Below are positions 26,201 to 64,000 of a stretch of DNA of 64,000 nt, piece after piece. This DNA is from Schmidtea polychroa (Eukaryota). The position numbers and the translations under genes were made by a program. Every line of letters starts with the position of its first letter. Positions within the stretch are counted from its first letter, which is position 1. The notes below the pieces were generated by a model, which made no database searches, had not been told where the DNA came from, and saw only the letters and a list, made by a program, of their open reading frames with translations. The stretch spans positions 105,688,397 to 105,752,396 of the forward strand of contig CM097887.1 in assembly GCA_044892525.1 (NCBI GenBank). The letters run 5' to 3'.

Positions 26201-29200
26201 GCGGTATTTATTTTGATAAGATCTGAATTGTATTTTAATTATTTAAAGAACTTTCAAAAATTAAGTCTTTATTATTAACAAGTGGTTTAAATTGCTAGGT
26301 TTATTGAAATTAAGCGCTAAGTGTTATATTTTATTTACTTTTCTGTTATTATATTTCATTGTAGAAAATATTCTTTTAAAAAATAAATTTTCCTTGAATA
26401 TATGATGTCAATATCTGCTAACATTCACATTATCGAATTTTAACTGCAATTTGAAAGCTTTTAGATTTGTGCAAAACATTTAACCGACCTTATTAATTTG
26501 TTTTTCAATTTTTATAATTTAATATGAATGAAAGGTAGCTGTCTGATATTCTATTGTCTCTTATACAATAGAGATCATTACTGTTCCATATCATTGCGAC
26601 AAGCAGATTATCTCGTCTAGAATATTAACATTTAACTTGGCTGTTGATTGATTCACTGGTTATTAGCTACATTTCTAGATTTAACAATTATTAATTAAAA
26701 GTTTAAATACGACCATTTTAATTTATTAACCTCAATAATTACATTAAAATTATTTTTTGTAGGACTATAATATAAATCGTGTTATATATTAATCTCGTTA
26801 GAATCATCAAAATGTTTCAGACTTTCAAAATTTGTGAAATTTAATTAGAATTTGCTATTCTAATTAGATATAATTAAAATAAATCTACAATTTAAAAATT
26901 TTTATCTTGAAATCGAAATGCAGTCGATTTTTATAATCCTATTAAAGAGTGTACATATTGGAAATTAAATGAATTCGATTCAAATATCATCAGAAATGAA
27001 AATATGAACTATTTGAGGTTTAACTTTTCTAACAATTATAAAATTATTATGTTATACATTAAACATTTATGTAATCAAATACTACAGTTAGTTAGCTTCT
27101 GACATCTATAAAATACAAAAATTACGTAAATATAAAAAATTAGTACAGTTTATTTTATTCAACGTATTAGAGTACCAATAGATTAGTGAAAGTAATTTGT
27201 TAATAGCAGATGTTGAATCTGTCACTCAAATTTCATTTGATATAATAATTTTCACCTGCATAAAAATTAATATTACCAAATTAAAAATTCCATAAAAAAT
27301 TTAAAAAAAATCATTACAACCATAGAGATGCTAATTTGTTAACTTTTGGACGAAGTTTAATTGAACTGTTTTAGGAATTTTTAAACCTATTTGACTAAAT
27401 ATTCCATGTCTATATGTCGTAAATGGATATTTTTATATATTTTTGTTGAATTAACAATAACATTCAAGTATCTAATTACTTGAAGATATGTAATTATTAT
27501 TTATCATATCAAATGTATCAACTACATTTTTAGATCCACTTAATCTGGTCCAAGATCTATCCATTAAAAAATTTAAATAAGTTTTTGAAAATAGATATAA
27601 ATAGAACTTTAATAATGAGGTATATTATTTATACTATAGTCATTATAATTACTGAGATGCAAATCACCAAAAAGGCTAGGTTAAAATCTCAATATCAATA
27701 AATTTTTTATTTCCCCCTTAGAAATGATTAACATTGTCGTATTTTAATTAATTATTTTGACAATCGACTCAAGATCACTTCATAGTCAACTGGTAGATTG
27801 CGATCCATTTTCTTGAAACTTTAATTAACTACTATATTTGGCCTTCTATTGTTTGATAGACCGGTACAAATTACTAGAATTCTTAAGGATAACTAGAAAT
27901 TTGTGACAATCTTAATAAAATTTTAGTCAACCTTAAACTTATTTATTATACACGATAATAAATAATTAAATTTTAATGATTTTTAAAAGTAGTGTTGATG
28001 GAAATTTTTTATTTATAGCTAATTAACATCTTATATCCTCATCTTTTATTTACAATCTCGTTTATCTAATTCGATTATTGATCAATATGGTAAATAAAAT
28101 CCACACATCGATCTGTAGTCTGATAGAATGGAGATAAATTAGATAGTTTATCAATAGAATTAAAAGTTTTACTGATAATAAAATATAGAATTTTAAGCCA
28201 ATTCATTTTTCGATTTTTTATTGAACTCTGAACAGGAATTTCCAATTAATAAAACTGCCGTAAATTAGCATACAAATCGGAGAATGTTTTATGCTATTGA
28301 TAGTTTCTAATTATGATTAAATTGTTTATCACTGCACACTGAGTTTGTAATTTCGTTCTTTTTATTTATTTACAGTTAGCTATGTGTGTATGGCCTGTAA
28401 AAATTATTATAAAACTGATTAATTTAATTAAATGTTTCATATTTTGTATATTATTGTTGGATGTGCTTTAAAAGTATTTATCGTCAACAGCTAGAAGAAG
28501 CCCAAGAAAGGATCGCCAAATATAGAGAAGACACTGAAAAACTTGCCGAAGAAAATAAAACTATAAAATCTAATTTTACAAAATTAGAACGTTCAAAGGC
28601 CAAGGTAAGATAGTAAAACCTTTTTTGTTTTGTTTTCTTATCCAGTTTCAATAGACCGATGAACATCTAAGAACAATAGAAAATTCTAACGCAGAATCAA
28701 TAGCTAAAATTGAAGAGATAGAAAGAAAATTAACCCAAAACAATTCCGAAAATGTAGAACTGAAACAAAAGTTTGAAATATCCTCACAAAAACTCCATAA
28801 ATCAAAAATTGAATTGAAATCAGAACAAGAAAAATTGAAATTAGTTCAATGTGAAAAAGACAATGCTATTAAAAACCAAGAAGAAATTACTAGAAAATTC
28901 AATGAATTATTTGAAAAGAACAAAAGTGACAATTCAAATCACGTTGAAATGTATCGTCAATATGAACATAAAATTTCCCAAATTAATAATGATTATAAAC
29001 AGGTGAAGATCGAAACTGTTAATTTGAATAATTTATTGCAAGCGAAAGAAAAAGAAATCAATAATTTAAATAAGGAATTGAACAATTTAAATATTCAATT
29101 AACTAAAAGTAAAGAAGAAAACCACAATCTCTCGTTTAATTTTAATAAAATTTCTAAAGATTTGAACTCAAGAGAATCTCAAACATCTCAAATCTCTAAT

Positions 29201-32200
29201 GAAAACCGACGTTTATCAGAAGATCTTGACAATTTAAAAACCGAAATAAGTTTTACAAAAGTGGACAATGAATTGAAATTAAAAAAGATGTCGGAAGATT
29301 TAAAGGAAAAGGATGCCATGCTTCATGATCTTGAAAACGATAAGAGTTTAATGGAAGAAGAAATCGACAGATTAAGAAAAGAATTCGAAAATTTAAGAGA
29401 AATTAATGAAAAAACTTTGTCTAATGTATTAGAATCGAAAGCCAATTTAGAAGAAACTAATAGAGAATTACACAAACAAATAGAAATTGCAAAGAAAGAA
29501 TTTACAGATGAGAATATTAAATTGATGAACGAAATCGAACGTTTACAACTTGATTGTAGTGATAAAATTGGAATTTTTAATGATAAATCTTGTCTCCAGG
29601 AAGAAATCACTCTTTTGAAGACATCTTGTTCAAACAAAGAAGAAGAGTTAAGCAAACTTCATGCAATTTCTGAAGAATTGAAAGAAAAAAATAATGATTT
29701 ACGAGTATTACAAGATCAAAAAATGGATTTTTTGAAAGAAATTGATCATTTGAAAAAAGAAATCAATTCCAGAGATTTTTCAAACAATGAGAAAGTTATC
29801 GAGTTATCTCAGAGTGTAAAAACAAACGAAATCGTTATTTCTGAACTTTTAAATGAAAAGAAACAATTAGAGAAAAAGTTAGAAGATTTGAAAAAGTCAA
29901 TCGGTGAAAGGGAAATTTATTTCCAGAATTCCAAACCAAAAGTCGAGTTTGAAGAACTTTCCAAAAAGTTGGAACAGAAAAATGAGGAGCTTTTGAAAGT
30001 TCAACACGAAAAACGAGAATTGAAATCCGAGATAAACAAAGCCAATGAATATTACAAACGCCAAATGGCTGATTTAAATGAAAATCTTGAAAGGAAAATC
30101 AAAGAATTGGACTTTCAAAATGATTTCTGCATAGCTTGGAAAGATAAATGTGAACAGTTGGAAAAGATGTTACAAGAAGCACTCAATTCAAATCGTCAAG
30201 TCGAGAGCATTATTCAAGAAACCCGTGTTGAACCAATCGAATCTTTTGCCAGTTCTTGTCGCACTGCTGAAGAAATGAAGTCCCACATTGTTAAACTTGA
30301 ATCGGAATTGTTAGCTCTTCAACGCAAATATTACGAATTGAAGACTACTGCCATTGTGAGTAAATAGATTTATATTTTAGTATCAATTTTTTATTAAATT
30401 AGTTAATTATTATTTTGTTTTAAATAATTACTATTGATTATATTGATTTTAATACTAATTTATTCATTTTTTTTATATTGATTTTATTTAATACTGATTT
30501 ATTCATTTATTATATTGACTTTATTCAATATCGATTTATTCATTTCCCATCATTATTGATTTATTCAGAACCTTTATTTTCAAAATGTTAAAATAAAATT
30601 TTCCATTAACATGATGAATTAATATATTGATAAATAATTTTAAAAAAAATTCAAAAATGACGTATAAAATCTAAACATTTATGAAAATTCAAATTAATTT
30701 CTAAAATTAAATATTAATTAATATAATTTTTGTGCAAAAAAATTATTTAAAACATTATTTTTACAAAAATAAATAAGATTTTTAAATAATTTTCTGAAAT
30801 TGCAAAAATAATACATTGTTACATAGAAAATTTATTTACAATTGATATTGAAATAAAATGTCATATTGTCGATAAAAGTGAAAGTTACGGAGATTTTTTA
30901 ACTTTTAAATAATGAATCGCAAACATAAGTACAGATCTAGTAAATTATATATACTATATTAGAAAAGTAATTCACGAAGTGTAATATTGTGTTGTCTGGA
31001 AGTGTTACAACTATTGTTACATATTTGCTACCAAAACTACTTTCTGTGCTCATGAAACGAATTTTTATTCGTTTTACTTTAAAAATAACTGCTTAGGTTG
31101 TTTAGGTGTAACTTTTCTCTATAAATTATTTATTGAGTTTTACAATTTGATTTTTAAAGATCGCCTTACATTCCGAGAATTCGGTATATAGCAAAATATG
31201 AATGTTTTTGTGTATAATATAAAAATAGTCTCTATGATTTGACTCTTACCGAAAAATTATATTATATTGCCCAAAAAGTTTAGAGACCCATACAAACTAG
31301 TTACTGCACTGATTCATTATATTATTCTTTTCTATTATCCACGATTTGAATACAAATAGTAGTCTATTTCTGATTTTTTGTTAATTTTCATAAATTAAGA
31401 TTTTGAATTTTTAGAAACTAAAATTTAAAATAAATTCAATATTAATTTTACTCGTGTGAAAAATTAGTTTGAAATTTGAACTATTATAATTATTAAATTT
31501 TTGCCTGTTTCCAAAGGTCAAGTTATTTCATTTATAAAAAATTAATCAAATTAAAAATGCCAATTTAATTGTTTAAATCGATATTATTATTAGTAAAATA
31601 AAAAAATACAAAAGCTAAAAATAAAAATTCTCCCAGTTACATTTGACATTTACTCATTGAAATTTATTGATGAATTATGGCTGATTTTATACCACGACTC
31701 TTATTAAAACTTAATATTTTGAACTTAGATCTTTTAAATGAGAGATTTTTTTCCGAAGGTCATTTATAAAAACTAATCATATTTAGGATGTTAATTTAAT
31801 TCTTTAAATTGATATTATTATGGATTTTACCCTTTAGATGCGGATAAATCATTTCTTATGGTTCTCAATTGCGAAATCCAGATTTATCCCACGCTCTATA
31901 TATTTTTTAATTTAACTTTGAAAGTGAATAAAAGTGCAGCAGAGAATTAAATCGCAATTAAATCTTTAATTTTTATTGTATAATTGACTCATTAGTGACG
32001 CTTTATGAAATTTATCAGCGCTTAAAGGGTTAAACAAAAAGCAATGTTAAATTAAATCATTTCAACTTCTAAGAATGGAATTTTATCAATCACATGTTAC
32101 ATAATATATCCATGTAGTTGATTTTACACTCATTCGTTCGCAAGTTTCATAAATCCAATATCGACTGAATTATTTTATTTTTATTTATAAATGGCGTGAT

Positions 32201-35200
32201 CAACGACAATATCCAGAAAAATAGACTACTAGTTCAAAAACTTAAAAATTTCTATAATTTTTCAGATGGCTCGAGGTCCCCTCAAATTTCAGATATGAAT
32301 CATCATATTCCATTTGTTTTTTGAAGCATTATGATTCTCGAAAGAAACTTTTATAAATTAAGTAGTGATTTATAATTTTTAAGTTAACAATCAAAAGAAT
32401 TCTCGTGACAATTCTATTGCTGTTTGTAATTTGTGATATTTTTTTAAAAAATACTAATACAGATACTAAATGGCCTATAACTGGATTCTAATAGGTTTAA
32501 ATTATGCAAAATAAAATCACTGAATTGTTACGATTAAAGGGAAATTGTTCATATTAATAATTCAAAAGTTATTATTTAAGCATAAAAAGACTCCAAATCT
32601 AAAATTTTTATTCAAAATATTTTTACTAAAAATCTGTTTGCGGTCCCCAAACGGGAACCGCTGATCCAGACTATTTAATTTGTAAGAAATTGACAAATTT
32701 TTTATTCCCAGGCAAGTAATGATATTCCTGAATCTAATTCGAAAAGCCCAGCAAACGTTAATATTTACCAATCAGATATCATTAGTATTCCACCAGCAGA
32801 CGCGACAATTGAAGCGGAAACTATTTCCGATATTAAGATTGATCAGTAATTATTCGATATTTCATAACTGCTATAGAAAAAAAATATTTTCATTAGATCT
32901 TATTCTGCCAGTCACCTCCTTGATTCCATTGAAAAGTTGAACATTGAAATTTCCGAGCAGCGATTGAAAAATCAAGTATATATTATTTTAAGATTTGTTA
33001 TTTCATAGTACCTTGTAATTAATTATTTATCTACTTATTTTTTTATAACCTATTGATTTTGCCTATTTCTAACAATTTCCTCGAGTTCTGAGTGCTAAGA
33101 TAATTGAGTATCACATTTATTCGTATTTGTAGATTCGAATTACTCATCAAATCGTTTTTAAAATCTACAAGTCATAAAAATCAATAATTGTAAAAATATT
33201 TGAACCATTGCTAAAAATAATCTAAAAGATTATTATCTAATCAATAATTCAATTCTTTTTTAATATCTACGAATCTCTTTGAAAATCAAACCAATAGAAT
33301 TCCAAATATTCGGTGTTATTAAAAACGCATCTAATTCATCGTAATTTAAATCAGAAATATTTATTGTAACATTTATTCATAATTTTTAAGGCATAAAATT
33401 GTCATTCATGCCAAAATTTGTCTAGATATTGATTGAAGATTTAATATTCTTTGGCTCCAACTTTTTTTAGCTAAATTAATCGATTGATTACATAGACATC
33501 TTTTTTATTACAATTTTCAAATATAATTCAATTTTGTATATTTTATAGTATAAACAAATATTTCATATCTGCCAAAATTAATATAAATTAAAAAAAATTG
33601 AAATTAAATTTAAAATAATTGGTTAACCCATTAGTTACTGTAAACCTCAAATGAGGATTATTATGTTTTACAGTTCTAATTTTAAAAGTTGGCATCACTG
33701 AATAATTGCAGTTGCTAGATACTATCAATATATCCTAACTTATCAGTTCCCAGTCACAGCCGCTTAAACACATGATTTTATTTGATTAAAATAGGGCATA
33801 CTATCCATAACCCTAACCCTTTTTTATTTTTTATTTTGACTTTTATAGATTTTAATAACATTTATCATCATCTAATTATAATAAATGTAAAGCGATGTTG
33901 AACAATGTATCACAAAGATGTAATACGGGGTCAGTTTCAGTTGATTTTGTACAAGAAATAGTTAAAATACGTCAACAAAATTGCTGTCAAATTAGATATC
34001 AATTGACAAATGGTTGTTGTCTGTAAGAAATAATTTCTGATTATTTATTTTTTTCTGTTACTATATAGAACCATATAAAATAGTAATGGACTAGCGGAAT
34101 TTTGAAAAAAAAATCGATTCATTTTATAACAGGGCTTCCAATCTTTTGAATAATCTATCTTTGAGAATTACTACAAACTCTAGTTGAGCGAATTTAGATT
34201 TCAGTATGTCGAATAAATGAAAGAAAACAGATATTATAAGAAAAAAATAAGCAACATTAGTTTTTAATTAATATGGAAGACGATGATTTTACACAATAAA
34301 CATACATGGAGGTGCTACAGTGCATTATCGGGCTGTTGAACACGTGATAGTAAGTGAAAGTTGCTTTAAATGAAAAATATTTGTTCGCAAAAAAGTAATT
34401 ACACTCTTCAGACGGTACAACGGACTTGAAACCGCTTTTTTGACCTTAGTGATACGCATGTAATATTAGATTTTGAAATCATATAATGAATATATTCTTT
34501 GGCCTATTGAGATCTTTCTGTATTTTATGGTATATCATTATTTTAGCAAGTGATTCTAAAATACTTTTTGGTTAATTTTTTGTCATTATTGAATTCTAAA
34601 TTTCCTATTAAATTCTTTTAATCAGATTTTCAATTATCCAATTTGCATTGACACTTTGATTCTTCAACGCTTAACTATTGTTGAAAAAGCTTCGAATTAG
34701 TATTTTGATAACTTTCCAACATTTTCTATAACGCATTCTATTTAATCACCAAGGAGAAATTTTCAAAATGCATAAATCATAGACAAGTGCATTTTAAATT
34801 TGTCTCAAGTCTTCGCCATTCAACAAATATTTGATCTGTGAAGTACTGGTTGTCGAATTACTTGCACTAGAAATCCATTATAAATGAATAATTAGTCAAG
34901 TTGTGCTTTCCTAATCAAATGAAAATCTCTTAATTAAGCAACATTTTTTGTGTAGTGAAATATCGATTTTAATAACCGATTTGACTCTGTTTCACTGTTT
35001 TAGACCTTAGACAAACAGTCAATTGACAAAAATATTGAAGTAAATGCCTTAAAGCAATGCTTGTATGGATTAGACGGTGATCTGCTTTCTATTGAACATT
35101 TGGCGCTTGTACATATTTATATTTCTTTATACTTTTATTTCTAATTGTTGTTGCTTATTGTTTAAGTTACCTTAAACATATCTATGTTTTGTATTTGTGT

Positions 35201-38200
35201 TATATTGGAATCATAGCAAATTGATAACAAAGACTTTTATCAATTTAGGATTTACAGAAATCATTTTCTGAATCATCATCAGAGAAAAATAAACTCAAAA
35301 CCGACTATAATAAATTGATGAAAGAACATGAAGTAACGCAAATTTTTACTAACTGCCTAAATTTTGATTTCTCTATGTGCAGTCTGTCAAGGCAAAATAT
35401 GACTCGCTAGCTGAGGAATTTTATGTGTTGAGAAATGCGACAGAAATTCAGGACAATAATGAAACGATTCAACTATTGGAAGAGCAATTAAAAAGGTAAT
35501 TTTTAAAAATCAAATATTGTTTAATAAGTTCTAATTTGAATTATTCACACTTAGAAATAATTCTATTAATTTTCCAAAAGTAATAATTTTCTAGTTTATT
35601 ATTTAATTTTTCTTCATAATTTTCTTCATAATAAATAAAAGTTAAATATTACGTCGGTTTTTGGAAAGCTAAAAATAAATACATAGTTGAAAATTATTTA
35701 TGAATATTATTACATTACCGAATCAGTTGAACATATCAATTGGTGTATATCATGCCAAAATTTGTATTTAAATTTGATGATATTAAATGTCAGTCGTTCG
35801 TTCTCCGGTAAAAATACATTATGACATATGCAGACAATGTCAATGATACTTATAATTCAATCATATTTTATATTAATCTGTTTCATTTGCAGACATGATT
35901 GTTTTATTCTATTTTTTTATTTATTATAATANNNNNNNNNNNNNNNNNNNNNNNNNNNNNNNNNNNNNNNNNNNNNNNNNNNNNNNNNNNNNNNNNNNNN
36001 NNNNNNNNNNNNNNNNNNNNNNNNNNNNNNNNNNNNNNNNNNNNNNNNNNNNNNNNNNNNNNNNNNNNNNNNNNNNNNNNNNNNNTTGTATAATGGTTTT
36101 TCCAATACAGAAACCACTAAACTTATGTCATATGATGGAGTAACAAATGGAAACCATGCTTTTGGAGGGCCTTGCAAACACCCATTCTAGAAATAAAATC
36201 ACCAAAATAGACTTTGAAAAGGCTAGGAAAAAACTTTAAATTATATTTTATTATAAATTTAAAATGTAGAATTTTATTGGTTTAAATAATAAAAAACTAG
36301 TTAAATATTGCATTTTATTTCTTATATAAACATCTATTTAAACTTGCTCAAATCATTTCGTTATCTATTTCATCCGTAAAAAATATTTAGCTGCCAGAAG
36401 GGTATTAGAATAAATCTTGTGCGTAAACCTTAAGTTTGTAGTTAATTTCCGTGCAAAAAATAAAAACCAATTTTAATTTTTACATACAATTCATTCGTGC
36501 ACTTTTTAATGCACTATTTTATTTCAATAAATTTTTTCAATTTTGAACTAATAATACTGAAATTTAAAATAGAATAAAATCTGGAATTTATTGAACTAAG
36601 AAAATCCATTTGGAATTATAGAGGATTTTATTGTTATCTTTTTCTTAAACACAATAGATATATAACTTTTTCAAATATTTATTCAATACAACAAACAATT
36701 AATAAAGATTGATTAATCAACAAATTGTCACTATGTTATTTTGTTGCCATGTCTACTAGATTTGTGTGCATTAGCATATTTTAGTTTATTAATATTGTCC
36801 TAGGAAATACCATTGTTATTAATTCGTAATTACACTTTCACAATTTTCTTATAAAATCTATAAATTCCACAAATAATATCGATATACTGTAACTTTTCCA
36901 ATTTATTAATTTACCATGTTCTGTTAGTGTATATTTGACAATAAATTGGTTATAAATTTTTATATTAACATGTTATTTTGCTGCTCAGTTGTGGCTGAAA
37001 TATTGCTGCAGGTTTGATCTGAAACGCAACTAGTTCAATTAATATCTTTTAACAGAATTTTTTATTTTTCCTATTCGATAATGTTTTCCCCACATGTTTG
37101 ACCTAGTTGAATGTAACAAATATTGGCTTTGTTTTAGATGTCAAGAAGAAAATTATCATTTGAAAATTCAATTGGATCATTATAGAGAAACACTTGAAAA
37201 AACAGAAAACTGCCTACAAAATATCCAGGCATCTGTTGACCAGGAAGAAAATAACTGGAAGATTTGCTTAAAATCATCTGAGCAAGAACAAGAACGAGTA
37301 AATTGTTTATAATCTATTTTTAAATCAATCATATGAAAATCAGCTCGAAGAAAAAATCAAAGAACTTCTTAATCAAATCGAGGAATTAAGAACTAAACAG
37401 CAATCGGATTCACCGACGATGGTATGTATTAAACTGTTTTTAAAAAGGGTTATGCAATGATTGTTTGATTGAGTCTTTTAGTTTTATATTGAAATTTTGT
37501 CAAAAATCTTAGCGGTTTAATAAAAATTTTATAAAATAATAAATATTATTATAAACCAATTATATTCATTTACCAATTGATTTTTGATTATTAATTTAAA
37601 TTATAATAAAATTCTTTTTATATCTATGGTTAAAAATGTTTAATTATTATTATTACTATTTCTCTAAAAATTGTACTAGTAAAATATTTGTGATATTAAT
37701 TAATAAAAATTTGGAATAATTAATAATAATAATATTATTAAATGATAATTAATTAAAATAATAATAACTTTTTATATAAGTGTCTGTGATTACCAGATCA
37801 GAATTATTATCGATAAGTTTTTCCGCATAATTGATCAACTATTATATTTTTTCTACTCGAATTGATTTTTTTATCAAAATAATTTCGAAATCAAAATTCA
37901 TGTTAATCTGTATTATAATTATATTATAATTGGAAATTTAAAATTATTTGTTTTAATTCTAAAAAAAAATGATTTTGGAAAATTGTTATCATGAATTTAA
38001 AATAAATTAGCTTTGCTGCTTTGAAAGAGCTTTTTAAAATAATGCTTGCTCTAATTTTATTGACTTTTGAGTGCCTGATATTGATTTTTTATGATTACGG
38101 TTTTCGAGGATTTGTTTTTATTATTTTCACTGGAACAACAAGTTATTATCAATGTGTTCTGTCTAATTAGATCTCTATGGAAACCCCACCCATTGCAAAC

Positions 38201-38272
38201 GGGTCGCTATCTTCTGAAACGAAAAAGAAAAGAAAGCGTAAAAACAGAAAGAAGAAGAATAAAAATCGTTAG
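23257..38272 (+). CDS. Kinectin / ribosome receptor p180 (KTN1/RRBP1 family) ER membrane coiled-coil protein, 12 exons, 1024 aa
   Basis: Exons 23257-23587, 23640-23713, 28491-28604, 28655-30355, 32712-32845, 32897-32975, 35004-35108, 35249-35332, 35383-35495, 37138-37297, 37344-37421 and 38171-38272 (3075 nt, all phases match). N-terminal signal-anchor followed by a Lys-rich stretch, long heptad region, and LDHYRETLEKTENCLQNIQASVDQEENNWK matching the KTN1/RRBP1 motif Y(R/K)S(I/V)LAETEG(M/I)L..LQ.SVE.EE..W. Confidence 0.82.
24718..25004. mobile_element. hAT-type MITE
   Basis: Ends CGGTGCTTCTCATC / CAGTGCATCTCGTC; 8-bp TSD CTTTAAAC / TTTTAAAC (7/8). Confidence 0.7.
25446..25585. repeat. Perfect 48-bp inverted repeat with 44-nt spacer
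   Basis: 25446-25493 is the exact reverse complement of 25538-25585; immediately followed by a hAT-like right end (..CAGGTTGGGAACAACTG, to 25618). Confidence 0.92.
31830..32029. mobile_element. piggyBac-like MITE
   Basis: Ends CCCTTTAGATGCGGATAAAT / CCCTTTAAGCGCTGATAAAT; flanks TTTA and TTAA. Confidence 0.5.
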
Positions 38273-40686: not shown

Positions 40687-41179
40687 CAGTGGTGGCATTC
40701 AGCCGGTTCGCACGAACCGTTTCTATTCTACCGCTTATTAACAAAAAAAAATTGGAAATATTTACAATAATTTTAAACACATTATAATATATCGTCGGTT
40801 TAAAAGCAGAAATCACTAAGTCAAAAATCAACTTAGGAATTTCTGATTGTATTATAATAGCACGATTGACATAGTGCAATAAATGTCCGCCTAAAAACCT
40901 CAACAATATCAATTTACGACTTATAAGATTTTGCCCAAATAAAGTTGGCATTATAATGATTTAATTTAGTACAAAAAATCAAAATCTTGGAAAATGTACT
41001 TAGTGAATTTTGCTTGTAAACCAACGATATATATGTATATATTTGAAAAAGGCAGTGCCTAAAATTCGTGAGTATCAACAAACATCGATATATTACTGAT
41101 TTATAGTCTTCAAGCTCTCTTTTTATTTCAATGGATAAAATAATCAGTGGTGAAATTGGAAGAAATAAAAGTTATTACA

Positions 41180-41226
<47 letters not shown>

Positions 41227-41384
41227 TAATAAGAAATATAGATATATCTGTTTCTATTATCTTTTTTTATTGAAATCTTTTAAAATAATTTATGAAAAAA
41301 GTTTAATTTTTGGTTGAGTGCGATCCGGTTCTCAAATTTTTGAGGGTGCGAACCGGTTATTAAATATTTTGAATCACACCACTG
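40687..41384. mobile_element. hAT-type MITE containing a (TA)n run
   Basis: TIRs CAGTGGTGGCATTCA / CAGTGGTGTGATTCA; perfect TSD GTTATAAC (40679-86, 41385-92); subterminal CGAACCG(G/T)TT motifs; (TA)n at about 41180-41222. Confidence 0.85.
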
Positions 41385-53900: not shown

Positions 53901-56900
53901 ATAAATCCTTCGCTACCCAAGACGATGTTGAAGTTGATGAAAATGTAATCAAACCGGAAATTGCTTCTCAAATGACGGCAATCAGTGTGACTGACGATGC
54001 AAAACTCATTGAAGAATTGCAAACGAGAATCGAAGATCTTTTGAAAGAAATTCAACAACTTCGCAATGAGAAATTGGATTCTAAATTCACTACAACAGAT
54101 CAAACAAGAATTCTTGAAACTTCTACGTCTTCAGAAATGACTTCGATTGTAGTTCACGAAACAGCAACAGGTGGGTCTGACGGCATTTTGAATGAGATTT
54201 TCCAGGAATTAGAGGAAAAGAATCGAGAAATTTCAATGCTTCAAGACCACAAAAGCTCTCTGATACATGAAATTGATCAAATGAAACGAGAACTTATTAA
54301 CAAAGACGCAGATGTAGAATTGAAATTGAAAGAAAAGAACAGTTTCATTATTGAATTGGAAAGGCAGAAAACGGAGTTGGAACAAAATGTCGAATATTTG
54401 ACAAAGGAAATGAGCGAATGCGTGATTTACCGAAAGGATGGAGACGCGAATGAGAAACTTGTTGAGTTGTATAAAGAACTAGAGATTAAGAACCACGATT
54501 TGATGTTGTTGAGAAATGAAAAAGTTACACTCTTAGAGGATATCGATAATATGCGTAGGGAAATGCATCAGAAATACGAAAGGTTCACTTTGACTTTGAA
54601 AGAGAAAGAAACAATTATCAGTGAATTGCATTCAATCAAAGTATCTCTCGAATCAAACATTGATCAAATGGCTCGAAGAGTGAGAGAAACAACAGAAATA
54701 TCTGGTCTTGAGAGTGAGCTTGATGTCAAATTAGTGGAGTTATACCAAGAAATCGACACAAAGAATCTGGATATTGTCACTCTTAAAAATGAGAAACTGG
54801 CGCTGTTGACAAATATTGAAAGATTGCAAACGGAATTGCGTGAAAGTAAAGAAAAGTACGTAGATTCATTCGAACAGATGACAAGGACAGTCGTTCATAA
54901 ATCCTTCGCTACCCAAGACGATGTTGAATTTGATGAAAATGTAATCAAACCGGAAATTGCTTCTCAAATGACGGCAATCAGTGTGACTGACGATGCAAAA
55001 CTCATTGAAGAATTGCAAACGAGAATCGAAGATCTTTTGAAAGAAATTCAACAACTTCGCAATGAGAAATTGGATTCTAAATTCACTACAACAGATCAAA
55101 CAAGAATTCTTGAAACTTCTACGTCTTCAGAAATGACTTCGATTGTAGTTCACGAAACAGCAACAGATGGGTCTGACGGCATTTTGAATGAGATTTTCCA
55201 GGAATTAGAGGAAAAGAATCGAGAAATTTCAATGCTTCAAGACCAGAAAAGCTCTCTGATACATGGAATTGATCAAATGAAACGAGAACTTATTAACAAA
55301 GACGCAGATGTAGAATTGAAATTGAAAGAAAAGAACAGTTTCATTATTGAATTGGAAAGGCAGAAAACGGAGTTGGAACAAAATGTCGAATATTTGACAA
55401 AGGAAATGAGCGAATGCGTGATTTACCGAAAGGATGGAGACGCGAATGAGAAACTTGTTGAGTTGTATAAAGAACTAGAGATTAAGAACCACGATTTGAT
55501 GTTGTTGAGAAATGAAAAAGTTACACTCTTAGAGGATATCGATAATATGCGTAGGGAAATGCATCAGAAATACGAAAGGTTCACTTTGACTTTGAAAGAG
55601 AAAGAAACAATTATCAGTGAATTGCATTCAATCAAAGTATCTCTCGAATCAAACATTGATCAAATGGCTCGAAGAGTGAGAGAAACAACAGAAATATCTG
55701 GTCTTGAGAGTGAGCTTGATGTCAAATTAGTGGAGTTATACCAAGAAATCGACACAAAGAATCTGGATATTGTCACTCTTAAAAATGAGAAACTGGCGCT
55801 GTTGACAAATATTGAAAGATTGCAAACGGAATTGCGTGAAAGTAAAGAAAAGTACGTAGATTCATTCGAACAGATGACAAGGACAGTCGTTCATAAATCC
55901 TTCGCTACCCAAGACGATGTTGAATTTGATGAAAATGTAATCAAACCGGAAATTGCTTCTCAAATGACGGCAATCAGTGTGACTGACGATGCAAAACTCA
56001 TTGAAGAATTGCAAACGAGAATCGAAGATCTTTTGAAAGAAATTCAACAACTTCGCAATGAGAAATTGGATTCTAAATTCACTACAACAGATCAAACAAG
56101 AATTCTTGAAACTTCTACGTCTTCAGAAATGACTTCGATTGTAGTTCACGAAACAGCAACAGATGGGTCTGACGGCATTTTGAATGAGATTTTCCAGGAA
56201 TTAGAGGAAAAGAATCGAGAAATTTCAATGCTTCAAGACCACAAAAGCTCTCTGATACATGGAATTGATCAAATGAAACGAGAACTTATTAACAAAGACG
56301 CAGATGTAGAATTGAAATTGAAAGAAAAGAACAGTTTCATTATTGAATTGGAAAGGCAGAAAACGGAGTTGGAACAAAATGTCGAATATTTGACAAAGGA
56401 AATGAGCGAATGCGTGATTTACCGAAAGGATGGAGACGCGAATGAGAAACTTGTTGAGTTGTATAAAGAACTAGAGATTAAGAACCACGATTTGATGTTG
56501 TTGAGAAATGAAAAAGTTACACTCTTAGAGGATATCGATAATATGCGTAGGGAAATGCATCAGAAATACGAAAGGTTCACTTTGACTTTGAAAGAGAAAG
56601 AAACAATTATCAGTGAATTGCATTCAATCAAAGTATCTCTCGAATCAAACATTGATCAAATGGCTCGAAGAGTGAGAGAAACAACAGAAATATCTGGTCT
56701 TGAGAGTGAGCTTGATGTCAAATTAGTGGAGTTATACCAAGAAATCGACACAAAGAATCTGGATATTGTCACTCTTAAAAATGAGAAACTGGCGCTGTTG
56801 ACAAATATTGAAAGATTGCAAACGGAATTGCGTGAAAGTAAAGAAAAGTACGTAGATTCATTCGAACAGATGACAAGGACAGTCGTTCATAAATCCTTCG

Positions 56901-59900
56901 CTACCCAAGACGATGTTGAAGTTGATGAAAATGTAATCAAACCGGAAATTGCTTCTCAAATGACGGCAATCAGTGTGACTGACGATGCAAAACTCATTGA
57001 AGAATTGCAAACGAGAATCGAAGATCTTTTGAAAGAAATTCAACAACTTCGCAATGAGAAATTGGATTCTAAATTCACTACAACAGATCAAACAAGAATT
57101 CTTGAAACTTCTACGTCTTCAGAAATGACTTCGATTGTAGTTCACGAAACAGCAACAGATGGGTCTGACGGCATTTTGAATGAGATTTTCCAGGAATTAG
57201 AGGAAAAGAATCGAGAAATTTCAATGCTTCAAGACCACAAAAGCTCTCTGATACATGAAATTGATCAAATGAAACGAGAACTTATTAACAAAGACGCAGA
57301 TGTAGAATTGAAATTGAAAGAAAAGAACAGTTTCATTATTGAATTGGAAAGGCAGAAAACGGAGTTGGAACAAAATGTCGAATATTTGACAAAGGAAATG
57401 AGCGAATGCGTGATTTACCGAAAGGATGGAGACGCGAATGAGAAACTTGTTGAGTTGTATAAAGAACTAGAGATTAAGAACCACGATTTGATGTTGTTGA
57501 GAAATGAAAAAGTTACACTCTTAGAGGATATCGATAATATGCGTAGGGAAATGCATCAGAAATACGAAAGGTTCACTTTGACTTTGAAAGAGAAAGAAAC
57601 AATTATCAGTGAATTGCATTCAATCAAAGTATCTCTCGAATCAAACATTGATCAAATGGCTCGAAGAGTGAGAGAAACAACAGAAATATCTGGTCTTGAG
57701 AGTGAGCTTGATGTCAAATTAGTGGAGTTATACCAAGAAATCGACACAAAGAATCTGGATATTGTCACTCTTAAAAATGAGAAACTGGCGCTGTTGACAA
57801 ATATTGAAAGATTGCAAACGGAATTGCGTGAAAGTAAAGAAAAGTACGTAGATTCATTCGAACAGATGACAAGGACAGTCGTTCATAAATCCTTCGCTAC
57901 CCAAGACGATGTTGAAGTTGATGAAAATGTAATCAAACCGGAAATTGCTTCTCAAATGACGGCAATCAGTGTGACTGACGATGCAAAACTCATTGAAGAA
58001 TTGCAAACGAGAATCGAAGATCTTTTGAAAGAAATTCAACAACTTCGCAATGAGAAATTGGATTCTAAATTCACTACAACAGATCAAACAAGAATTCTTG
58101 AAACTTCTACGTCTTCAGAAATGACTTCGATTGTAGTTCAAGAAACAGCAACAGATGGGTCTGACGGCATTTTGAATGAGATTTTCCAGGAATTAGAGGA
58201 AAAGAATCGAGAAATTTCAATGCTTCAAGACCACAAAAGCTCTCTGATACATGAAATTGATCAAATGAAACGAGAACTTATTAACAAAGACGCAGATGTA
58301 GAATTGAAATTGAAAGAAAAGAACAGTTTCATTATTGAATTGGAAAGGCAGAAAACGGAGTTGGAACAAAATGTCGAATATTTGACAAAGGAAATGAGCG
58401 AATGCGTGATTTACCGAAAGGATGGAGACGCGAATGAGAAACTTGTTGAGTTGTATAAAGAACTAGAGATTAAGAACCACGATTTGATGTTGTTGAGAAA
58501 TGAAAAAGTTACACTCTTAGAGGATATCGATAATATGCGTAGGGAAATGCATCAGAAATACGAAAGGTTCACTTTGACTTTGAAAGAGAAAGAAACAATT
58601 ATCAGTGAATTGCATTCAATCAAAGTATCTCTCGAATCAAACATTGATCAAATGGCTCGAAGAGTGAGAGAAACAACAGAAATATCTGGTCTTGAGAGTG
58701 AGCTTGATGTCAAATTAGTGGAGTTATACCAAGAAATCGACACAAAGAATCTGGATATTGTCACTCTTAAAAATGAGAAACTGGCGCTGTTGACAAATAT
58801 TGAAAGATTGCAAACGGAATTGCGTGAAAGTAAAGAAAAGTACGTAGATTCATTCGAACAGATGACAAGGACAGTCGTTCATAAATCCTTCGCTACCCAA
58901 GACGATGTTGAAGTTGATGAAAATGTAATCAAACCGGAAATTGCTTCTCAAATGACGGCAATCAGTGTGACTGACGATGCAAAACTCATTGAAGAATTGC
59001 AAACGAGAATCGAAGATCTTTTGAAAGAAATTCAACAACTTCGCAATGAGAAATTGGATTCTAAATTCACTACAACAGATCAAACAAGAATTCTTGAAAC
59101 TTCTACGTCTTCAGAAATGACTTCGATTGTAGTTCACGAAACAGCAACAGATGGGTCTGACGGCATTTTGAATGAGATTTTCCAGGAATTAGAGGAAAAG
59201 AATCGAGAAATTTCAATGCTTCAAGACCACAAAAGCTCTCTGATACATGAAATTGATCAAATGAAACGAGAACTTATTAACAAAGACGCAGATGTAGAAT
59301 TGAAATTGAAAGAAAAGAACAGTTTCATTATTGAATTGGAAAGGCAGAAAACGGAGTTGGAACAAAATGTCGAATATTTGACAAAGGAAATGAGCGAATG
59401 CGTGATTTACCGAAAGGATGGAGACGCGAATGAGAAACTTGTTGAGTTGTATAAAGAACTAGAGATTAAGAACCACGATTTGATGTTGTTGAGAAATGAA
59501 AAAGTTACACTCTTAGAGGATATCGATAATATGCGTAGGGAAATGCATCAGAAATACGAAAGGTTCACTTTGACTTTGAAAGAGAAAGAAACAATTATCA
59601 GTGAATTGCATTCAATCAAAGTATCTCTCGAATCAAACATTGATCAAATGGCTCGAAGAGTGAGAGAAACAACAGAAATATCTGGTCTTGAGAGTGAGCT
59701 TGATGTCAAATTAGTGGAGTTATACCAAGAAATCGACACAAAGAATCTGGATATTGTCACTCTTAAAAATGAGAAACTGGCGCTGTTGACAAATATTGAA
59801 AGATTGCAAACGGAATTGCGTGAAAGTAAAGAAAAGTACGTAGATTCATTCGAACAGATGACAAGGACAGTCGTTCATAAATCCTTCGCTACCCAAGACG

Positions 59901-62900
59901 ATGTTGAAGTTGATGAAAATGTAATCAAACCGGAAATTGCTTCTCAAATGACGGCAATCAGTGTGACTGACGATGCAAAACTCATTGAAGAATTGCAAAC
60001 GAGAATCGAAGATCTTTTGAAAGAAATTCAACAACTTCGCAATGAGAAATTGGATTCTAAATTCACTACAACAGATCAAACAAGAATTCTTGAAACTTCT
60101 ACGTCTTCAGAAATGACTTCGATTGTAGTTCAAGAAACAGCAACAGATGGGTCTGACGGCATTTTGAATGAGATTTTCCAGGAATTAGAGGAAAAGAATC
60201 GAGAAATTTCAATGCTTCAAGACCACAAAAGCTCTCTGATACATGAAATTGATCAAATGAAACGAGAACTTATTAACAAAGACGCAGATGTAGAATTGAA
60301 ATTGAAAGAAAAGAACAGTTTCATTATTGAATTGGAAAGGCAGAAAACGGAGTTGGAACAAAATGTCGAATATTTGACAAAGGAAATGAGCGAATGCGTG
60401 ATTTACCGAAAGGATGGAGACGCGAATGAGAAACTTGTTGAGTTGTATAAAGAACTAGAGATTAAGAACCACGATTTGATGTTGTTGAGAAATGAAAAAG
60501 TTACACTCTTAGAGGATATCGATAATATGCGTAGGGAAATGCATCAGAAATACGAAAGGTTCACTTTGACTTTGAAAGAGAAAGAAACAATTATCAGTGA
60601 ATTGCATTCAATCAAAGTATCTCTCGAATCAAACATTGATCAAATGGCTCGAAGAGTGAGAGAAACAACAGAAATATCTGGTCTTGAGAGTGAGCTTGAT
60701 GTCAAATTAGTGGAGTTATACCAAGAAATCGACACAAAGAATCTGGATATTGTCACTCTTAAAAATGAGAAACTGGCGCTGTTGACAAATATTGAAAGAT
60801 TGCAAACGGAATTGCGTGAAAGTAAAGAAAAGTACGTAGATTCATTCGAACAGATGACAAGGACAGTCGTTCATAAATCCTTCGCTACCCAAGACGATGT
60901 TGAAGTTGATGAAAATGTAATCAAACCGGAAATTGCTTCTCAAATGACGGCAATCAGTGTGACTGACGATGCAAAACTCATTGAAGAATTGCAAACGAGA
61001 ATCGAAGATCTTTTGAAAGAAATTCAACAACTTCGCAATGAGAAATTGGATTCTAAATTCACTACAACAGATCAAACAAGAATTCTTGAAACTTCTACGT
61101 CTTCAGAAATGACTTCGATTGTAGTTCACGAAACAGCAACAGATGGGTCTGACGGCATTTTGAATGAGATTTTCCAGGAATTAGAGGAAAAGAATCGAGA
61201 AATTTCAATGCTTCAAGACCACAAAAGCTCTCTGATACATGAAATTGATCAAATGAAACGAGAACTTATTAACAAAGACGCAGATGTAGAATTGAAATTG
61301 AAAGAAAAGAACAGTTTCATTATTGAATTGGAAAGGCAGAAAACGGAGTTGGAACAAAATGTCGAATATTTGACAAAGGAAATGAGCGAATGCGTGATTT
61401 ACCGAAAGGATGGAGACGCGAATGAGAAACTTGTTGAGTTGTATAAAGAACTAGAGATTAAGAACCACGATTTGATGTTGTTGAGAAATGAAAAAGTTAC
61501 ACTCTTAGAGGATATCGATAATATGCGTAGGGAAATGCATCAGAAATACGAAAGGTTCACTTTGACTTTGAAAGAGAAAGAAACAATTATCAGTGAATTG
61601 CATTCAATCAAAGTATCTCTCGAATCAAACATTGATCAAATGGCTCGAAGAGTGAGAGAAACAACAGAAATATCTGGTCTTGAGAGTGAGCTTGATGTCA
61701 AATTAGTGGAGTTATACCAAGAAATCGACACAAAGAATCTGGATATTGTCACTCTTAAAAATGAGAAACTGGCGCTGTTGACAAATATTGAAAGATTGCA
61801 AACGGAATTGCGTGAAAGTAAAGAAAAGTACGTAGATTCATTCGAACCGATGACAAGGACAGTCGTTCATAAATCCTTCGCTACCCAAGACGATGTTGAA
61901 GTTGATGAAAATGTAATCAAACCGGAAATTGCTTCTCAAATGACGGCAATCAGTGTGACTGACGATGCAAAACTCATTGAAGAATTGCAAACGAGAATCG
62001 AAGATCTTTTGAAAGAAATTCAACAACTTCGCAATGAGAAATTGGATTCTAAATTCACTACAACAGATCAAACAAGAATTCTTGAAACTTCTACGTCTTC
62101 AGAAATGACTTCGATTGTAGTTCACGAAACAGCAACAGATGGGTCTGACGGCATTTTGAATGAGATTTTCCAGGAATTAGAGGAAAAGAATCGAGAAATT
62201 TCAATGCTTCAAGACCAGAAAAGCTCTCTGATACATGGAATTGATCAAATGAAACGAGAACTTATTAACAAAGACGCAGATGTAGAATTGAAATTGAAAG
62301 AAAAGAACAGTTTCATTATTGAATTGGAAAGGCAGAAAACGGAGTTGGAACAAAATGTCGAATATTTGACAAAGGAAATGAGCGAATGCGTGATTTACCG
62401 AAAGGATGGAGACGCGAATGAGAAACTTGTTGAGTTGTATAAAGAACTAGAGATTAAGAACCACGATTTGATGTTGTTGAGAAATGAAAAAGTTACACTC
62501 TTAGAGGATATCGATAATATGCGTAGGGAAATGCATCAGAAATACGAAAGGTTCACTTTGACTTTGAAAGAGAAAGAAACAATTATCAGTGAATTGCATT
62601 CAATCAAAGTATCTCTCGAATCAAACATTGATCAAATGGCTCGAAGAGTGAGAGAAACAACAGAAATATCTGGTCTTGAGAGTGAGCTTGATGTCAAATT
62701 AGTGGAGTTATACCAAGAAATCGACACAAAGAATCTGGATATTGTCACTCTTAAAAATGAGAAACTGGCGCTGTTGACAAATATTGAAAGATTGCAAACG
62801 GAATTGCGTGAAAGTAAAGAAAAGTACGTAGATTCATTCGAACAGATGACAAGGACAGTCGTTCATAAATCCTTCGCTACCCAAGACGATGTTGAAGTTG

Positions 62901-64000
62901 ATGAAAATGTAATCAAACCGGAAATTGCTTCTCAAATGACGGCAATCAGTGTGACTGACGATGCAAAACTCATTGAAGAATTGCAAACGAGAATCGAAGA
63001 TCTTTTGAAAGAAATTCAACAACTTCGCAATGAGAAATTGGATTCTAAATTCACTACAACAGATCAAACAAGAATTCTTGAAACTTCTACGTCTTCAGAA
63101 ATGACTTCGATTGTAGTTCACGAAACAGCAACAGATGGGTCTGACGGCATTTTGAATGAGATTTTCCAGGAATTAGAGGAAAAGAATCGAGAAATTTCAA
63201 TGCTTCAAGACCACAAAAGCTCTCTGATACATGAAATTGATCAAATGAAACGAGAACTTATTAACAAAGACGCAGATGTAGAATTGAAATTGAAAGAAAA
63301 GAACAGTTTCATTATTGAATTGGAAAGGCAGAAAACGGAGTTGGAACAAAATGTCGAATATTTGACAAAGGAAATGAGCGAATGCGTGATTTACCGAAAG
63401 GATGGAGACGCGAATGAGAAACTTGTTGAGTTGTATAAAGAACTAGAGATTAAGAACCACGATTTGATGTTGTTGAGAAATGAAAAAGTTACACTCTTAG
63501 AGGATATCGATAATATGCGTAGGGAAATGCATCAGAAATACGAAAGGTTCACTTTGACTTTGAAAGAGAAAGAAACAATTATCAGTGAATTGCATTCAAT
63601 CAAAGTATCTCTCGAATCAAACATTGATCAAATGGCTCGAAGAGTGAGAGAAACAACAGAAATATCTGGTCTTGAGAGTGAGCTTGATGTCAAATTAGTG
63701 GAGTTATACCAAGAAATCGACACAAAGAATCTGGATATTGTCACTCTTAAAAATGAGAAACTGGCGCTGTTGACAAATATTGAAAGATTGCAAACGGAAT
63801 TGCGTGAAAGTAAAGAAAAGTACGTAGATTCATTCGAACAGATGACAAGGACAGTCGTTCATAAATCCTTCGCTACCCAAGACGATGTTGAAGTTGATGA
63901 AAATGTAATCAAACCGGAAATTGCTTCTCAAATGACGGCAATCAGTGTGACTGACGATGCAAAACTCATTGAAGAATTGCAAACGAGAATCGAAGATCTT
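47969..64000 (+). CDS. Giant repetitive coiled-coil protein coding region, 3'-incomplete: small exon 47969-48082 plus giant exon 48125 to beyond 64000
   Basis: Exon 47969-48082 (38 codons, phase 0), 42-nt GT-AG intron, then an open frame from ATG 48125 to 64000 (15876 nt = 5292 codons, last codons ..RIEDL) with no stop or frameshift. E/K/L-rich heptads. Missing from the ORF track, presumably because it has no stop in the window. Confidence 0.88.
48584..64000 (+). repeat. Coding tandem array, 996-bp (332-aa) unit, about 15.5 copies
   Basis: Antisense ORFs recur exactly every 996 bp (48890, 49886 ... 62834). Units differ only by a few point substitutions and no indels. Confidence 0.98.

What the first reader, a model, noticed from the sequence alone, without database searches (positions are those of the whole stretch)
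28655..64000. The giant repeat derives from the kinectin/p180-like gene and may be its alternative giant 3' end
Seen: each 332-aa unit holds three copies of a ~34-aa motif (KLVELYQEIDTKNLDIVTLKNEKLALLTNIERLQ; ILNEIFQELEEKNREISMLQDHKSSLIHEIDQMK; KLVELYKELEIKNHDLMLLRNEKVTLLEDIDNMR). The same motif recurs in exon 4 of the upstream gene (KLHAISEELKEKNNDLRVLQDQKMDFLKEIDHLK; KLKKMSEDLKEKDAMLHDLENDKSLMEEEIDRLR). Exon 11 ends in phase 0 at 37421, and both 47969 and 48125 begin in phase 0; I found no separate first exon for the giant frame. Inference: either alternative splicing yields a 1024-aa isoform with a polybasic tail versus a >6,300-aa ER-anchored giant, or a tandem paralog starts near 48 kb. 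The first would resemble giant-exon isoforms of ankyrins or nesprins, but in the KTN1/RRBP1 family.
Basis: partly seen in the sequence, partly recalled or inferred. Interest (0 to 1): 0.72.

Follow-up and report, generated by a model that had tools for sequence, protein, structure and literature searches.

The report
Giant repeat exon extends upstream gene
A 23.6-kb exon of near-identical 332-residue coiled-coil repeats is spliced in frame onto the membrane-anchored coiled-coil gene upstream, so one locus can encode a 1,024-residue protein or one of about 9,100 residues.

Summary

- **Repeat:** it is real, with a 996-bp period and 23 units that differ at 0-24 of 996 nt. The open frame runs from 48125 past the window end to 71695.
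- **Origin:** one unit aligns colinearly with exon 4 (aa 127-471) of the upstream gene. In the 781-Mb genome, exon 4 matches almost nothing else.
- **RNA evidence:** one RNA-derived public contig lacks the 42-nt intron 48083-48124. It also carries, in front of 47969, the last 28 nt of the exon ending at 37421.
- **Correction:** the giant exon is not a 3' end. Exons follow it that are paralogous to upstream exons 5-12, with the same phases and with 79-, 84- and 160-nt exon sizes repeated. They include a second polybasic tail exon.
- **Reading:** the locus is an old duplication of exon block 3-12 that lacks its own membrane-anchor exons 1-2. The second block is reached by skipping terminal exon 12. 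The modelled long open frame is 9,148 aa.
- **Not supported:** the kinectin/p180 family label. Pfam and HMMER against 1.84 billion proteins give no such match.
- **Limits:** one contig in one run. Nothing shows that exon 1 and the giant exon sit on one molecule, and translation is untested.

The scan noted this same exon in overlapping windows of this genome, not on other DNA.

The parts
23257..23587 (+). Exon 1: start codon, about 25 hydrophobic residues (predicted N-terminal membrane anchor), then a lysine-rich stretch
   Evidence: Read from the sequence. In frame in the 12-exon GT-AG model. No Pfam family, including PF05104. Its link to exon 3 onward is inferred and was not seen in RNA.
23640..23713 (+). 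Exon 2
   Evidence: AG/GT borders and phase consistent with the model; inferred.
28491..28604 (+). Exon 3 (114 nt, phase 0 to 0, followed by a 50-nt intron)
   Evidence: The orthologue fragment P0001 joins this exon directly to exon 4.
28655..30355 (+). Exon 4 (567 aa of coiled coil), the source-like paralogue of the giant exon
   Evidence: Orthologues P0001 (76% identity) and P0002 (34%) are the only HMMER hits among 1.84 billion proteins.
32712..32845 (+). Exon 5
   Evidence: Counterpart 5' lies at 73130-73239 with the same phases.
32897..32975 (+). Exon 6 (79 nt)
   Evidence: 67% aa identity to 73276-73365. Exon 6' is also 79 nt.
35004..35108 (+). Exon 7; no counterpart found in block 2
35249..35332 (+). 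Exon 8 (84 nt)
   Evidence: Exon 8' at 73401-73484 is also 84 nt; the similarity is weak (score 39 against a control of 31).
35383..35495 (+). Exon 9 (ends in phase 2)
35932..36085 (.). Assembly gap, inside intron 9 of the model
   Evidence: Exons 9 and 10 join in frame across it.
37138..37297 (+). Exon 10 (160 nt)
   Evidence: Paralogous to 93076-93235 and 96391-96550, each also 160 nt.
37344..37421 (+). Exon 11, with a GTATGT donor after 37421. This is the branch point between the two isoforms.
   Evidence: Its last 28 nt are carried by the RNA contig in front of 47969 and are unique in the genome.
38171..38272 (+). Exon 12: 33 codons ending in a polybasic tail plus TAG. Terminal exon of the 1,024-aa isoform; skipped in the long one.
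   Evidence: The paralogous polybasic exon at 98275-98367 scores 59 against a control of 37. Its use in RNA is only inferred, from where the contig begins.
37422..47968 (+). 10.5-kb intron of the long isoform. It contains exon 12 and transposon debris.
   Evidence: Junction 37421 to 47969. Run X1 has no RNA depth on its unique parts (table 2).
47969..48082 (+). Mini-exon of 114 nt (38 codons, no ATG in the reference, preceded by an in-frame TAG). Same size and phase as exon 3.
48083..48124 (+). 42-nt GT..AG intron
   Evidence: Removed in contigs of runs X1 and X2; retained in DNA runs X10 and X11 (tables 5 and 8).
48125..48589 (+). Unique 155-aa head of the giant exon
   Evidence: Covered by the X1 contig.
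48590..64000 (+). Array of 996-bp units. Units 1-15 and part of unit 16 lie in the window; the array and a unique 86-aa tail run on to 71695 (23 units in all).
   Evidence: Very high k-mer depth in both RNA and DNA runs.

Best explanation
The whole stretch from 23.2 kb to at least 98.4 kb (window coordinates carried on beyond the window end) is one transcription unit.

Origin of the layout (inferred). An old tandem duplication copied exon block 3-12 but not exons 1-2, which hold the start codon and the N-terminal membrane anchor. In the second block, a roughly 340-aa middle section of the exon-4 copy was later amplified into at least 23 near-identical 332-aa units. That produced a 23.6-kb exon.

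Two products.
- If the exon-11 donor at 37421 pairs with exon 12 (38171), the mRNA ends in a polybasic tail and stop codon and encodes 1,024 aa. This is inferred.
- If it pairs with the mini-exon at 47969, exon 12 is skipped and the frame runs on through the mini-exon, the giant exon and exons 5'-12'. This junction is shown in RNA. The modelled open frame is 9,148 aa.

Likely form and role (inferred). Both products keep the same plan: membrane anchor, lysine-rich stretch, coiled-coil rod and a polybasic exon near the end. The rod is predicted to be long helices broken by two flexible acidic Ser/Thr-rich linkers per unit, roughly 40 nm per unit if extended. I therefore read the locus as encoding a membrane-anchored tether or spacer made in a short and a very long form. 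The protein belongs to a lineage-restricted coiled-coil family, not demonstrably to kinectin/p180.
For: RNA junction:
- X1 contig record 6 (586 nt, k-mer depth 24) lies on 47971-48081 and 48124-48568 with the 42-nt GT..AG intron removed.
- It carries a 30-nt overhang in front of 47971. That overhang equals 37394-37421 plus the first two mini-exon bases, one of which differs from the reference.
- The 28-mer is unique in the window and in the 781-Mb genome.
- Both sides of the junction have canonical GT/AG borders and the junction is in frame.

X1 behaves as RNA. It covers exons and dispersed repeats only, with zero depth on unique intron or intergenic bins. X10 and X11 cover all 30 bins and are colinear through the intron. 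X2, under a different organism label, also removes the 42-nt intron.

No second predecessor. The contig runs through the acceptor into exon 11, so in X1 no other assembled upstream partner converges on 47969. Logan contigs break at graph branches and overlap by k-1 = 30 nt (PMC12424806).

Block duplication:
- Exon 6 and exon 6' share 67% aa identity, and exon 10 has paralogues.
- Exon sizes 79, 84 and 160 nt and all intron phases recur. The mini-exon is 114 nt, the same as exon 3.
- There is a second polybasic exon.
- No copy of exons 1-2 lies between 38.3 and 48.1 kb.

Origin of the unit: colinear alignment with exon 4 aa 127-471. z = 10.5 for the unit and 13.9 for the last unit plus tail. 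Genome-wide, exon 4 matches only itself, the units and one small fragment.

Fold: an AlphaFold2 model of one unit (single sequence, mean pLDDT 77) has helices at 11-115, 140-181, 203-286 and 291-331, with low-confidence linkers.
Against: - The junction rests on one contig in one run whose RNA nature is deduced, not on record. X2 does not reach 47969.
- Contigs cannot show that exon 1 and the giant exon sit on the same molecule. They also cannot show how abundant the long form is, or rule out a weaker independent start.
- The giant frame opens with ATG immediately after its acceptor, so an internal start is possible.
- In X1 the k-mer depth ratio of repeat to head is about 105, against 35-40 in the DNA runs. 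That could mean extra transcripts that do not pass through the head, although the tool warns that depth is a poor measure.
- There is no sign of purifying selection. Variants between units are 4 synonymous to 15 non-synonymous, which is the neutral expectation. Of 10 differences between X1 and the reference, 1 is synonymous.
- The open frame could therefore simply reflect the youth of the array. Translation is untested.
- Exons 1-2, 5-9 and 5'-12' are models without RNA support here.
Confidence: 0.7

Rival explanations
1. The second block is a separate tandem paralogue with its own promoter near 48 kb. Translation would start at the ATG at 48125 and give a soluble giant protein. The 37421-to-47969 junction would then be a minor read-through chimera between neighbouring genes.
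For: - Read-through chimeras between tandem duplicates are common (general knowledge).
- The ATG is the first codon after the acceptor.
- Only one contig supports the junction.
- In X1 the repeat-to-head depth ratio is higher than in the DNA runs.
Against: - No paralogue of the 5' exons and no RNA depth on unique sequence upstream of 47969 in X1.
- The mini-exon has no ATG in the reference and is preceded by an in-frame stop, yet it is spliced into the RNA in two runs.
- The X1 contig is not broken at the acceptor, as it would be if a second upstream partner of similar abundance existed.
Confidence: 0.17
2. The long transcript is made but is not a functional protein-coding product. The array would be a very young, neutrally expanding satellite inside a decaying duplicated block, and the long RNA would be by-product splicing.
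For: - The synonymous to non-synonymous ratio among unit variants equals the random expectation.
- The head differs from X1 mostly by amino-acid changes.
- No homologue of the unit was found in a search limited to proteins of 183-581 aa.
Against: - A modelled frame of 9,148 codons stays open through 20 exons in a genome of about 25% GC. All borders are GT-AG and the phases are conserved.
- The downstream exons 5'-12' are old and still open.
- The tail of the giant exon keeps the conserved end of exon 4.
- With only 19 distinct variants the selection test has almost no power.
Confidence: 0.12
3. The upstream gene is the orthologue of kinectin (KTN1) or ribosome-binding protein p180 (RRBP1). The giant form would then be a new isoform within that family.
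For: Same layout by reading: an N-terminal hydrophobic anchor, a lysine-rich stretch just after it, then about 900 aa of coiled coil. p180 also carries a tandem-repeat region in some isoforms (general knowledge).
Against: - Exon 1 has no match to PF05104, and no part matches any Pfam family above its cut-off.
- phmmer of exon 4 against 1.84 billion representative proteins finds only two hits, both unnamed relatives.
- Language-model neighbours are a mix of unrelated coiled-coil proteins.
Confidence: 0.1

Closest known systems
Giant-exon isoforms of ankyrins (vertebrate AnkG-480/AnkB-440, Drosophila Ank2-XL, C. elegans unc-44) and giant nesprins
   Same: One gene yields a normal-sized and a giant protein through alternative use of a very large exon. 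The giant part is an extended, largely non-globular spacer (general knowledge).
   Different: - Here the giant exon lies in a duplicated copy of the gene's own exon block and is reached by skipping a terminal exon.
- It consists of at least 23 units that are more than 97% identical, mostly over 99%.
- No sequence relationship to these families was found.
Kinectin (KTN1) and ribosome-binding protein 1/p180 (RRBP1)
   Same: Predicted N-terminal membrane anchor, a basic stretch next to it, and a long coiled coil. p180 has a tandem-repeat region that varies between isoforms (general knowledge).
   Different: - No detectable sequence similarity and no PF05104 match.
- The repeats are 332-aa coiled-coil/linker units rather than basic decapeptides.
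- There is a polybasic C-terminal exon.
AHNAK and other proteins with a single giant exon of long tandem units (for example spidroins and Balbiani-ring proteins)
   Same: A single exon of more than 15 kb built from long, homogenised coding repeats (general knowledge).
   Different: The units here are mainly alpha-helical coiled coil. The array is an alternative extension of a membrane-anchored protein.
Membrane tethers with a C-terminal polybasic lipid-binding tail (yeast Ist2, STIM1)
   Same: A membrane anchor at one end and a polybasic stretch at or near the other, separated by a spacer (general knowledge).
   Different: This is an analogy of layout only. Nothing about localisation or lipid binding was tested, and there is no sequence similarity.

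Membership tests
KTN1/RRBP1 (kinectin/p180) | N-terminal membrane anchor followed by a basic region and a long coiled coil | tested here: met
   Read from the 1,024-aa model: about 25 hydrophobic residues, then a K-rich stretch, then coiled coil. Exon 1's link to the rest of the gene is a model only.
KTN1/RRBP1 (kinectin/p180) | Match to Pfam PF05104 (Rib_recp_KP_reg), the region shared after the anchor | tested here: not met
   hmmscan of exon 1 at E up to 10 lists 20 weak families, and PF05104 is not among them.
KTN1/RRBP1 (kinectin/p180) | Significant sequence similarity of the rod to KTN1/RRBP1 proteins | tested here: not met
   phmmer of exon 4 against 1.84 billion representatives gives only P0001 and P0002, both unnamed. 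Atlas neighbours are mixed coiled-coil proteins.
KTN1/RRBP1 (kinectin/p180) | ER localisation with kinesin or ribosome binding | not testable with these tools
   Needs cell biology.
Alternative giant-exon isoform of one gene | RNA junction joining an upstream exon of the shorter gene to the giant-exon block, in frame | tested here: met
   X1 contig: 37394-37421 joined to 47969..48081, joined to 48124... The upstream string is unique and the join is in frame.
Alternative giant-exon isoform of one gene | The short isoform (exon 11 to exon 12) exists in the same tissue or sample | tested here: inconclusive
   Indirect only. The contig begins exactly k-1 = 30 nt before the first base at which exon 12 (ATC...) and X1's mini-exon (ATG...) differ. 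A graph branch at that point would produce this.
Alternative giant-exon isoform of one gene | The first exon and the giant exon lie on the same molecule | not testable with these tools
   Only short contigs were available. Long-read cDNA is needed.
Tandem (segmental) duplicate of the upstream gene | Colinear paralogous exons with conserved phases | tested here: met
   Exons 3/mini, 4/giant, 5/5', 6/6', 8/8', 9/9', 10/10', 11/11' and 12/12'.
Tandem (segmental) duplicate of the upstream gene | Own 5' exons or promoter, that is, an independent gene | tested here: not met
   No paralogue of exons 1-2 in 38.3-48.1 kb. X1 has no RNA on unique sequence upstream of 47969. Absence is not proven.

The most novel reading that the evidence does not exclude
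One gene of this flatworm-like animal switches, by choice of terminal exon, between two forms of a membrane-anchored coiled-coil tether. The short form would be roughly 0.1 micrometre long. The long form would be about 1 micrometre long, built from at least 23 (by DNA depth perhaps 35-40) near-identical units. Both forms would end in a polybasic exon. The array would be young, homogenised and possibly variable in length between strains, which would make the reach of the tether an evolvable, heritable quantity.
Probability: 0.35. Interest if true: 0.7.

Novelty: new variant of a known kind. Interest (0 to 1): 0.56.

Why it matters
- **Annotation:** two apparent neighbouring genes become one locus whose products differ about nine-fold in length. 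Gene counts, expression quantification and RNAi design at this locus should take that into account.
- **A route to a giant isoform:** duplicate an exon block without its 5' end, keep the first block's terminal exon optional, then amplify part of one exon. This differs from the insertion of a novel exon seen in ankyrins.
- **Function, if translated:** the product would be one of the longest membrane-anchored coiled-coil rods described. It would be a natural test case for how the length of a tether or spacer matters in a cell.
- **Assembly:** units that are about 99.9% identical, together with the mismatch between assembled copies and DNA depth, flag a region where assembly length should not be trusted.

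Tried and rejected
- **Pfam** on exon 4, the first 1,000 aa of the giant frame, and exons 1, 3, 6 and 10: nothing above the curated cut-offs.
- **The search for homologous proteins** with exon 4 found only P0001. This search was limited to proteins of 313-997 aa.
- **The same tool with one unit** found nothing. It was limited to 183-581 aa, so the blank says little.
- **The look-up of encoding contigs:** P0001 is not on record. P0002 gives one 2-kb contig holding the exon-4 orthologue only.
- **Literature search** for kinectin in Schmidtea: no paper. I suspect a planarian because the genome is about 25% GC and 781 Mb with a few very large scaffolds, but I did not verify the organism.
- **Paralogues of exons 1-3 between the blocks:** none above control.
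- **DNA similarity between introns or flanks of the two blocks:** none except a TA-microsatellite-containing 230-bp match, which I do not trust.
- **Head of the giant exon against exon 4:** not significant, z = 1.5.
- **Selection test on unit variants:** no power.
- **A Cys-rich open frame at 33859-34023:** rejected as an exon because no acceptor fits the phase.
- **Trans-spliced leader at 47969 or 48125:** considered and rejected, because the overhang is exon 11, not a leader.
- **Genomic deletion in X1's strain:** rejected, because both missing pieces have GT..AG ends and X1 lacks unique non-exonic DNA.
Full report
**Setting.** The window is G000:C3:105688397-105752396 (+ strand) of a 781-Mb genome at about 25% GC. 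I fetched 50 kb beyond the window end. Coordinates above 64000 are window coordinates carried on into that extension.

**The repeat.**
- The + strand is open from 48125 to the window end, 5,292 codons. It stays open to 71755, and a GTGAGT donor follows 71695.
- DNA autocorrelation peaks sharply at lag 996.
- There are 23 units in register. Units 4-22 differ from the consensus at 0-3 of 996 nt, units 1-3 at 7-11, and the last unit at 24.
- The exon consists of a unique 155-aa head, the array, and a unique 86-aa tail.
- In two DNA runs the k-mer depth of the repeat is 35-40 times that of the single-copy head. The array is therefore real in DNA and may be longer than assembled. The tool warns that depth is not a copy number.

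**Relationship to the upstream gene.**
- The quoted motifs are present verbatim.
- A three-sequence motif HMM is significant for only one exon-4 copy: 18.3 bits, against a best single-match score of 11.7 among 2,000 shuffles.
- The whole unit nevertheless aligns colinearly with exon 4 aa 127-471 and places three motif pairs in register. The exon tail aligns with the end of exon 4.
- Smith-Waterman scores are 234 for the unit and 267 for the last unit plus tail. Shuffles give about 100 +/- 12 and reversed sequences 115-133.
- A six-frame search of the whole genome with exon 4 finds itself, the units (36-38% identity over aa 335-463) and one small broken fragment elsewhere.
- The giant exon is therefore a copy of exon 4 whose middle section was amplified.

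**Gene models.**
- A 12-exon GT-AG model starting at the ATG at 23257 gives exactly 1,024 aa and ends in a polybasic tail and TAG at 38270-38272.
- The assembly gap at 35932-36085 lies in intron 9. Exons 9 and 10 are in frame across it.
- Downstream of the giant exon I found counterparts of exons 5, 6, 8, 9, 10, 11 and 12 with the same intron phases. Exon sizes of 79, 84 and 160 nt are identical between the blocks.
- The mini-exon 47969-48082 is 114 nt, phase 0 to 0, and is followed by a 42-nt intron. Exon 3 is also 114 nt and is followed by a 50-nt intron.
- Nothing resembling exons 1-2 lies between the blocks.
- The duplication therefore covers exons 3-12 only, so the second block never had its own start codon or anchor.
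- Threading exons 1-11, the mini-exon, the giant exon and exons 5'-12' gives one open frame of 9,148 aa.

**RNA evidence.** The run search listed no run on record as RNA. I laid four runs on 42901-48900.
- X10 and X11 cover every bin and are colinear through the 42-nt intron, so they are DNA.
- X1 covers only exons and dispersed repeats.
- X1's 586-nt contig lies on 47971-48081 and 48124-48568 with the GT..AG intron removed. It carries 30 unaligned letters in front of 47971.
- The first 28 of those letters equal 37394-37421, the end of exon 11. They occur once in the window and once in the genome. The last two letters are the first two mini-exon bases, with one strain difference.
- X2, under another organism label, also removes the 42-nt intron but does not reach 47969.
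- Logan contigs are built with k = 31 and overlap their neighbours by 30 nt at branches (PMC12424806).
- The contig begins exactly 30 nt before the first base at which exon 12 (ATC...) and X1's mini-exon (ATG...) diverge. A branch from exon 11 to either exon 12 or the mini-exon would produce this. I take it as indirect evidence that both isoforms are present. It is an inference, not an observation.

**What the protein is.**
- No Pfam family passes its cut-off on any part, and PF05104 is not hit by exon 1.
- phmmer of exon 4 against 1.84 billion representatives returns only two unnamed proteins. One is a 76%-identical fragment and one is 34% identical.
- Language-model neighbours are unrelated coiled-coil proteins.
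- The family is therefore lineage-restricted. The kinectin/p180 label describes the layout, not membership.
- AlphaFold2 on one unit (single sequence, mean pLDDT 77) gives four long helices and two low-confidence linkers that are acidic and Ser/Thr-rich.
- If extended, about 265 helical residues per unit correspond to roughly 40 nm, so 23 units approach 1 micrometre. This is my arithmetic from the standard 0.15 nm rise per residue.
- Both isoforms end with a polybasic exon. The layout of anchor, rod and basic tail suggests a tether or spacer in two lengths. That function is inferred only.

**Constraint.**
- Variants among units are 4 synonymous to 15 non-synonymous, which is the neutral expectation. 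There are too few to test selection.
- Nine of ten differences between X1 and the reference in the mini-exon, the head and the start of the first unit change the amino acid, and none makes a stop.
- The array is very young or is being homogenised. Its open frame alone does not prove function. The old downstream exons that remain open argue weakly for function.

**Verdict.**
- The isoform model is supported by a direct junction, with the correction that the giant exon is internal to a duplicated block.
- The family assignment is not supported.
- Still open: the abundance of the long form, whether exon 1 and the giant exon share a molecule, translation, the true unit number, and function.

Noticed in passing
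extension 96391-96550 and about 96603-96653 (G000:C3, window offset 105688396): There is a third copy of exon 10, again exactly 160 nt with AG/GT borders, followed by an exon-11-like piece. It lies between exon 11' and the polybasic exon 12'. The phases do not allow both pairs in series, so the two pairs may be mutually exclusive, or one may be a relic.
   Followed up: partly
window 48606-48900 in runs X10 and X11: The DNA k-mer depth of the repeat is 35-40 times that of the adjacent single-copy head, while the assembly holds 23 units. The array may be collapsed in the assembly, or longer in those samples.
   Followed up: no
window 45395-46427, and 46000-46740: Reverse-transcriptase-like and GIY-YIG-like open frames suggest a fragment of a Penelope-like retroelement on the + strand. 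The stretch 46000-46740 has more than 40 dispersed copies at 72-84% identity across the genome.
   Followed up: partly
window 19361-20626: A stretch of about 1.2 kb is open in all three + frames. It is a short-period tandem repeat rich in T, C and A that translates to repeated PLI/LYW-type strings. It lies upstream of exon 1.
   Followed up: no
window 22422-22881 and 16001-16768: There are fragments of integrase-like and transposase-like open frames (transposon debris) just upstream of the gene's first exon.
   Followed up: no
extension 95222-95650: An open frame resembles the C-terminal dimerisation region of hAT transposases. It lies between the two exon 10/11 pairs of block 2.
   Followed up: no
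G000:C3:9637348-9637572 (- strand): An isolated fragment is 56% identical to exon 4 aa 42-124 and contains two in-frame TGA codons. It is probably a pseudogene piece.
   Followed up: no
window 47970 and 48196-48605, run X1: X1's transcript differs from the reference at 10 positions in about 640 nt, and 9 of them change the amino acid. One turns the first mini-exon codon from ACG into ATG. The run comes from a diverged strain or a sister taxon.
   Followed up: partly
window 28461-28490: The 10 residues read from the end of intron 2 just before exon 3 (MCFKSIYRQQ) are identical in the 76%-identical orthologue fragment P0001. Either the true acceptor of exon 3 lies further upstream, or the intron end is unusually conserved.
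   Followed up: no
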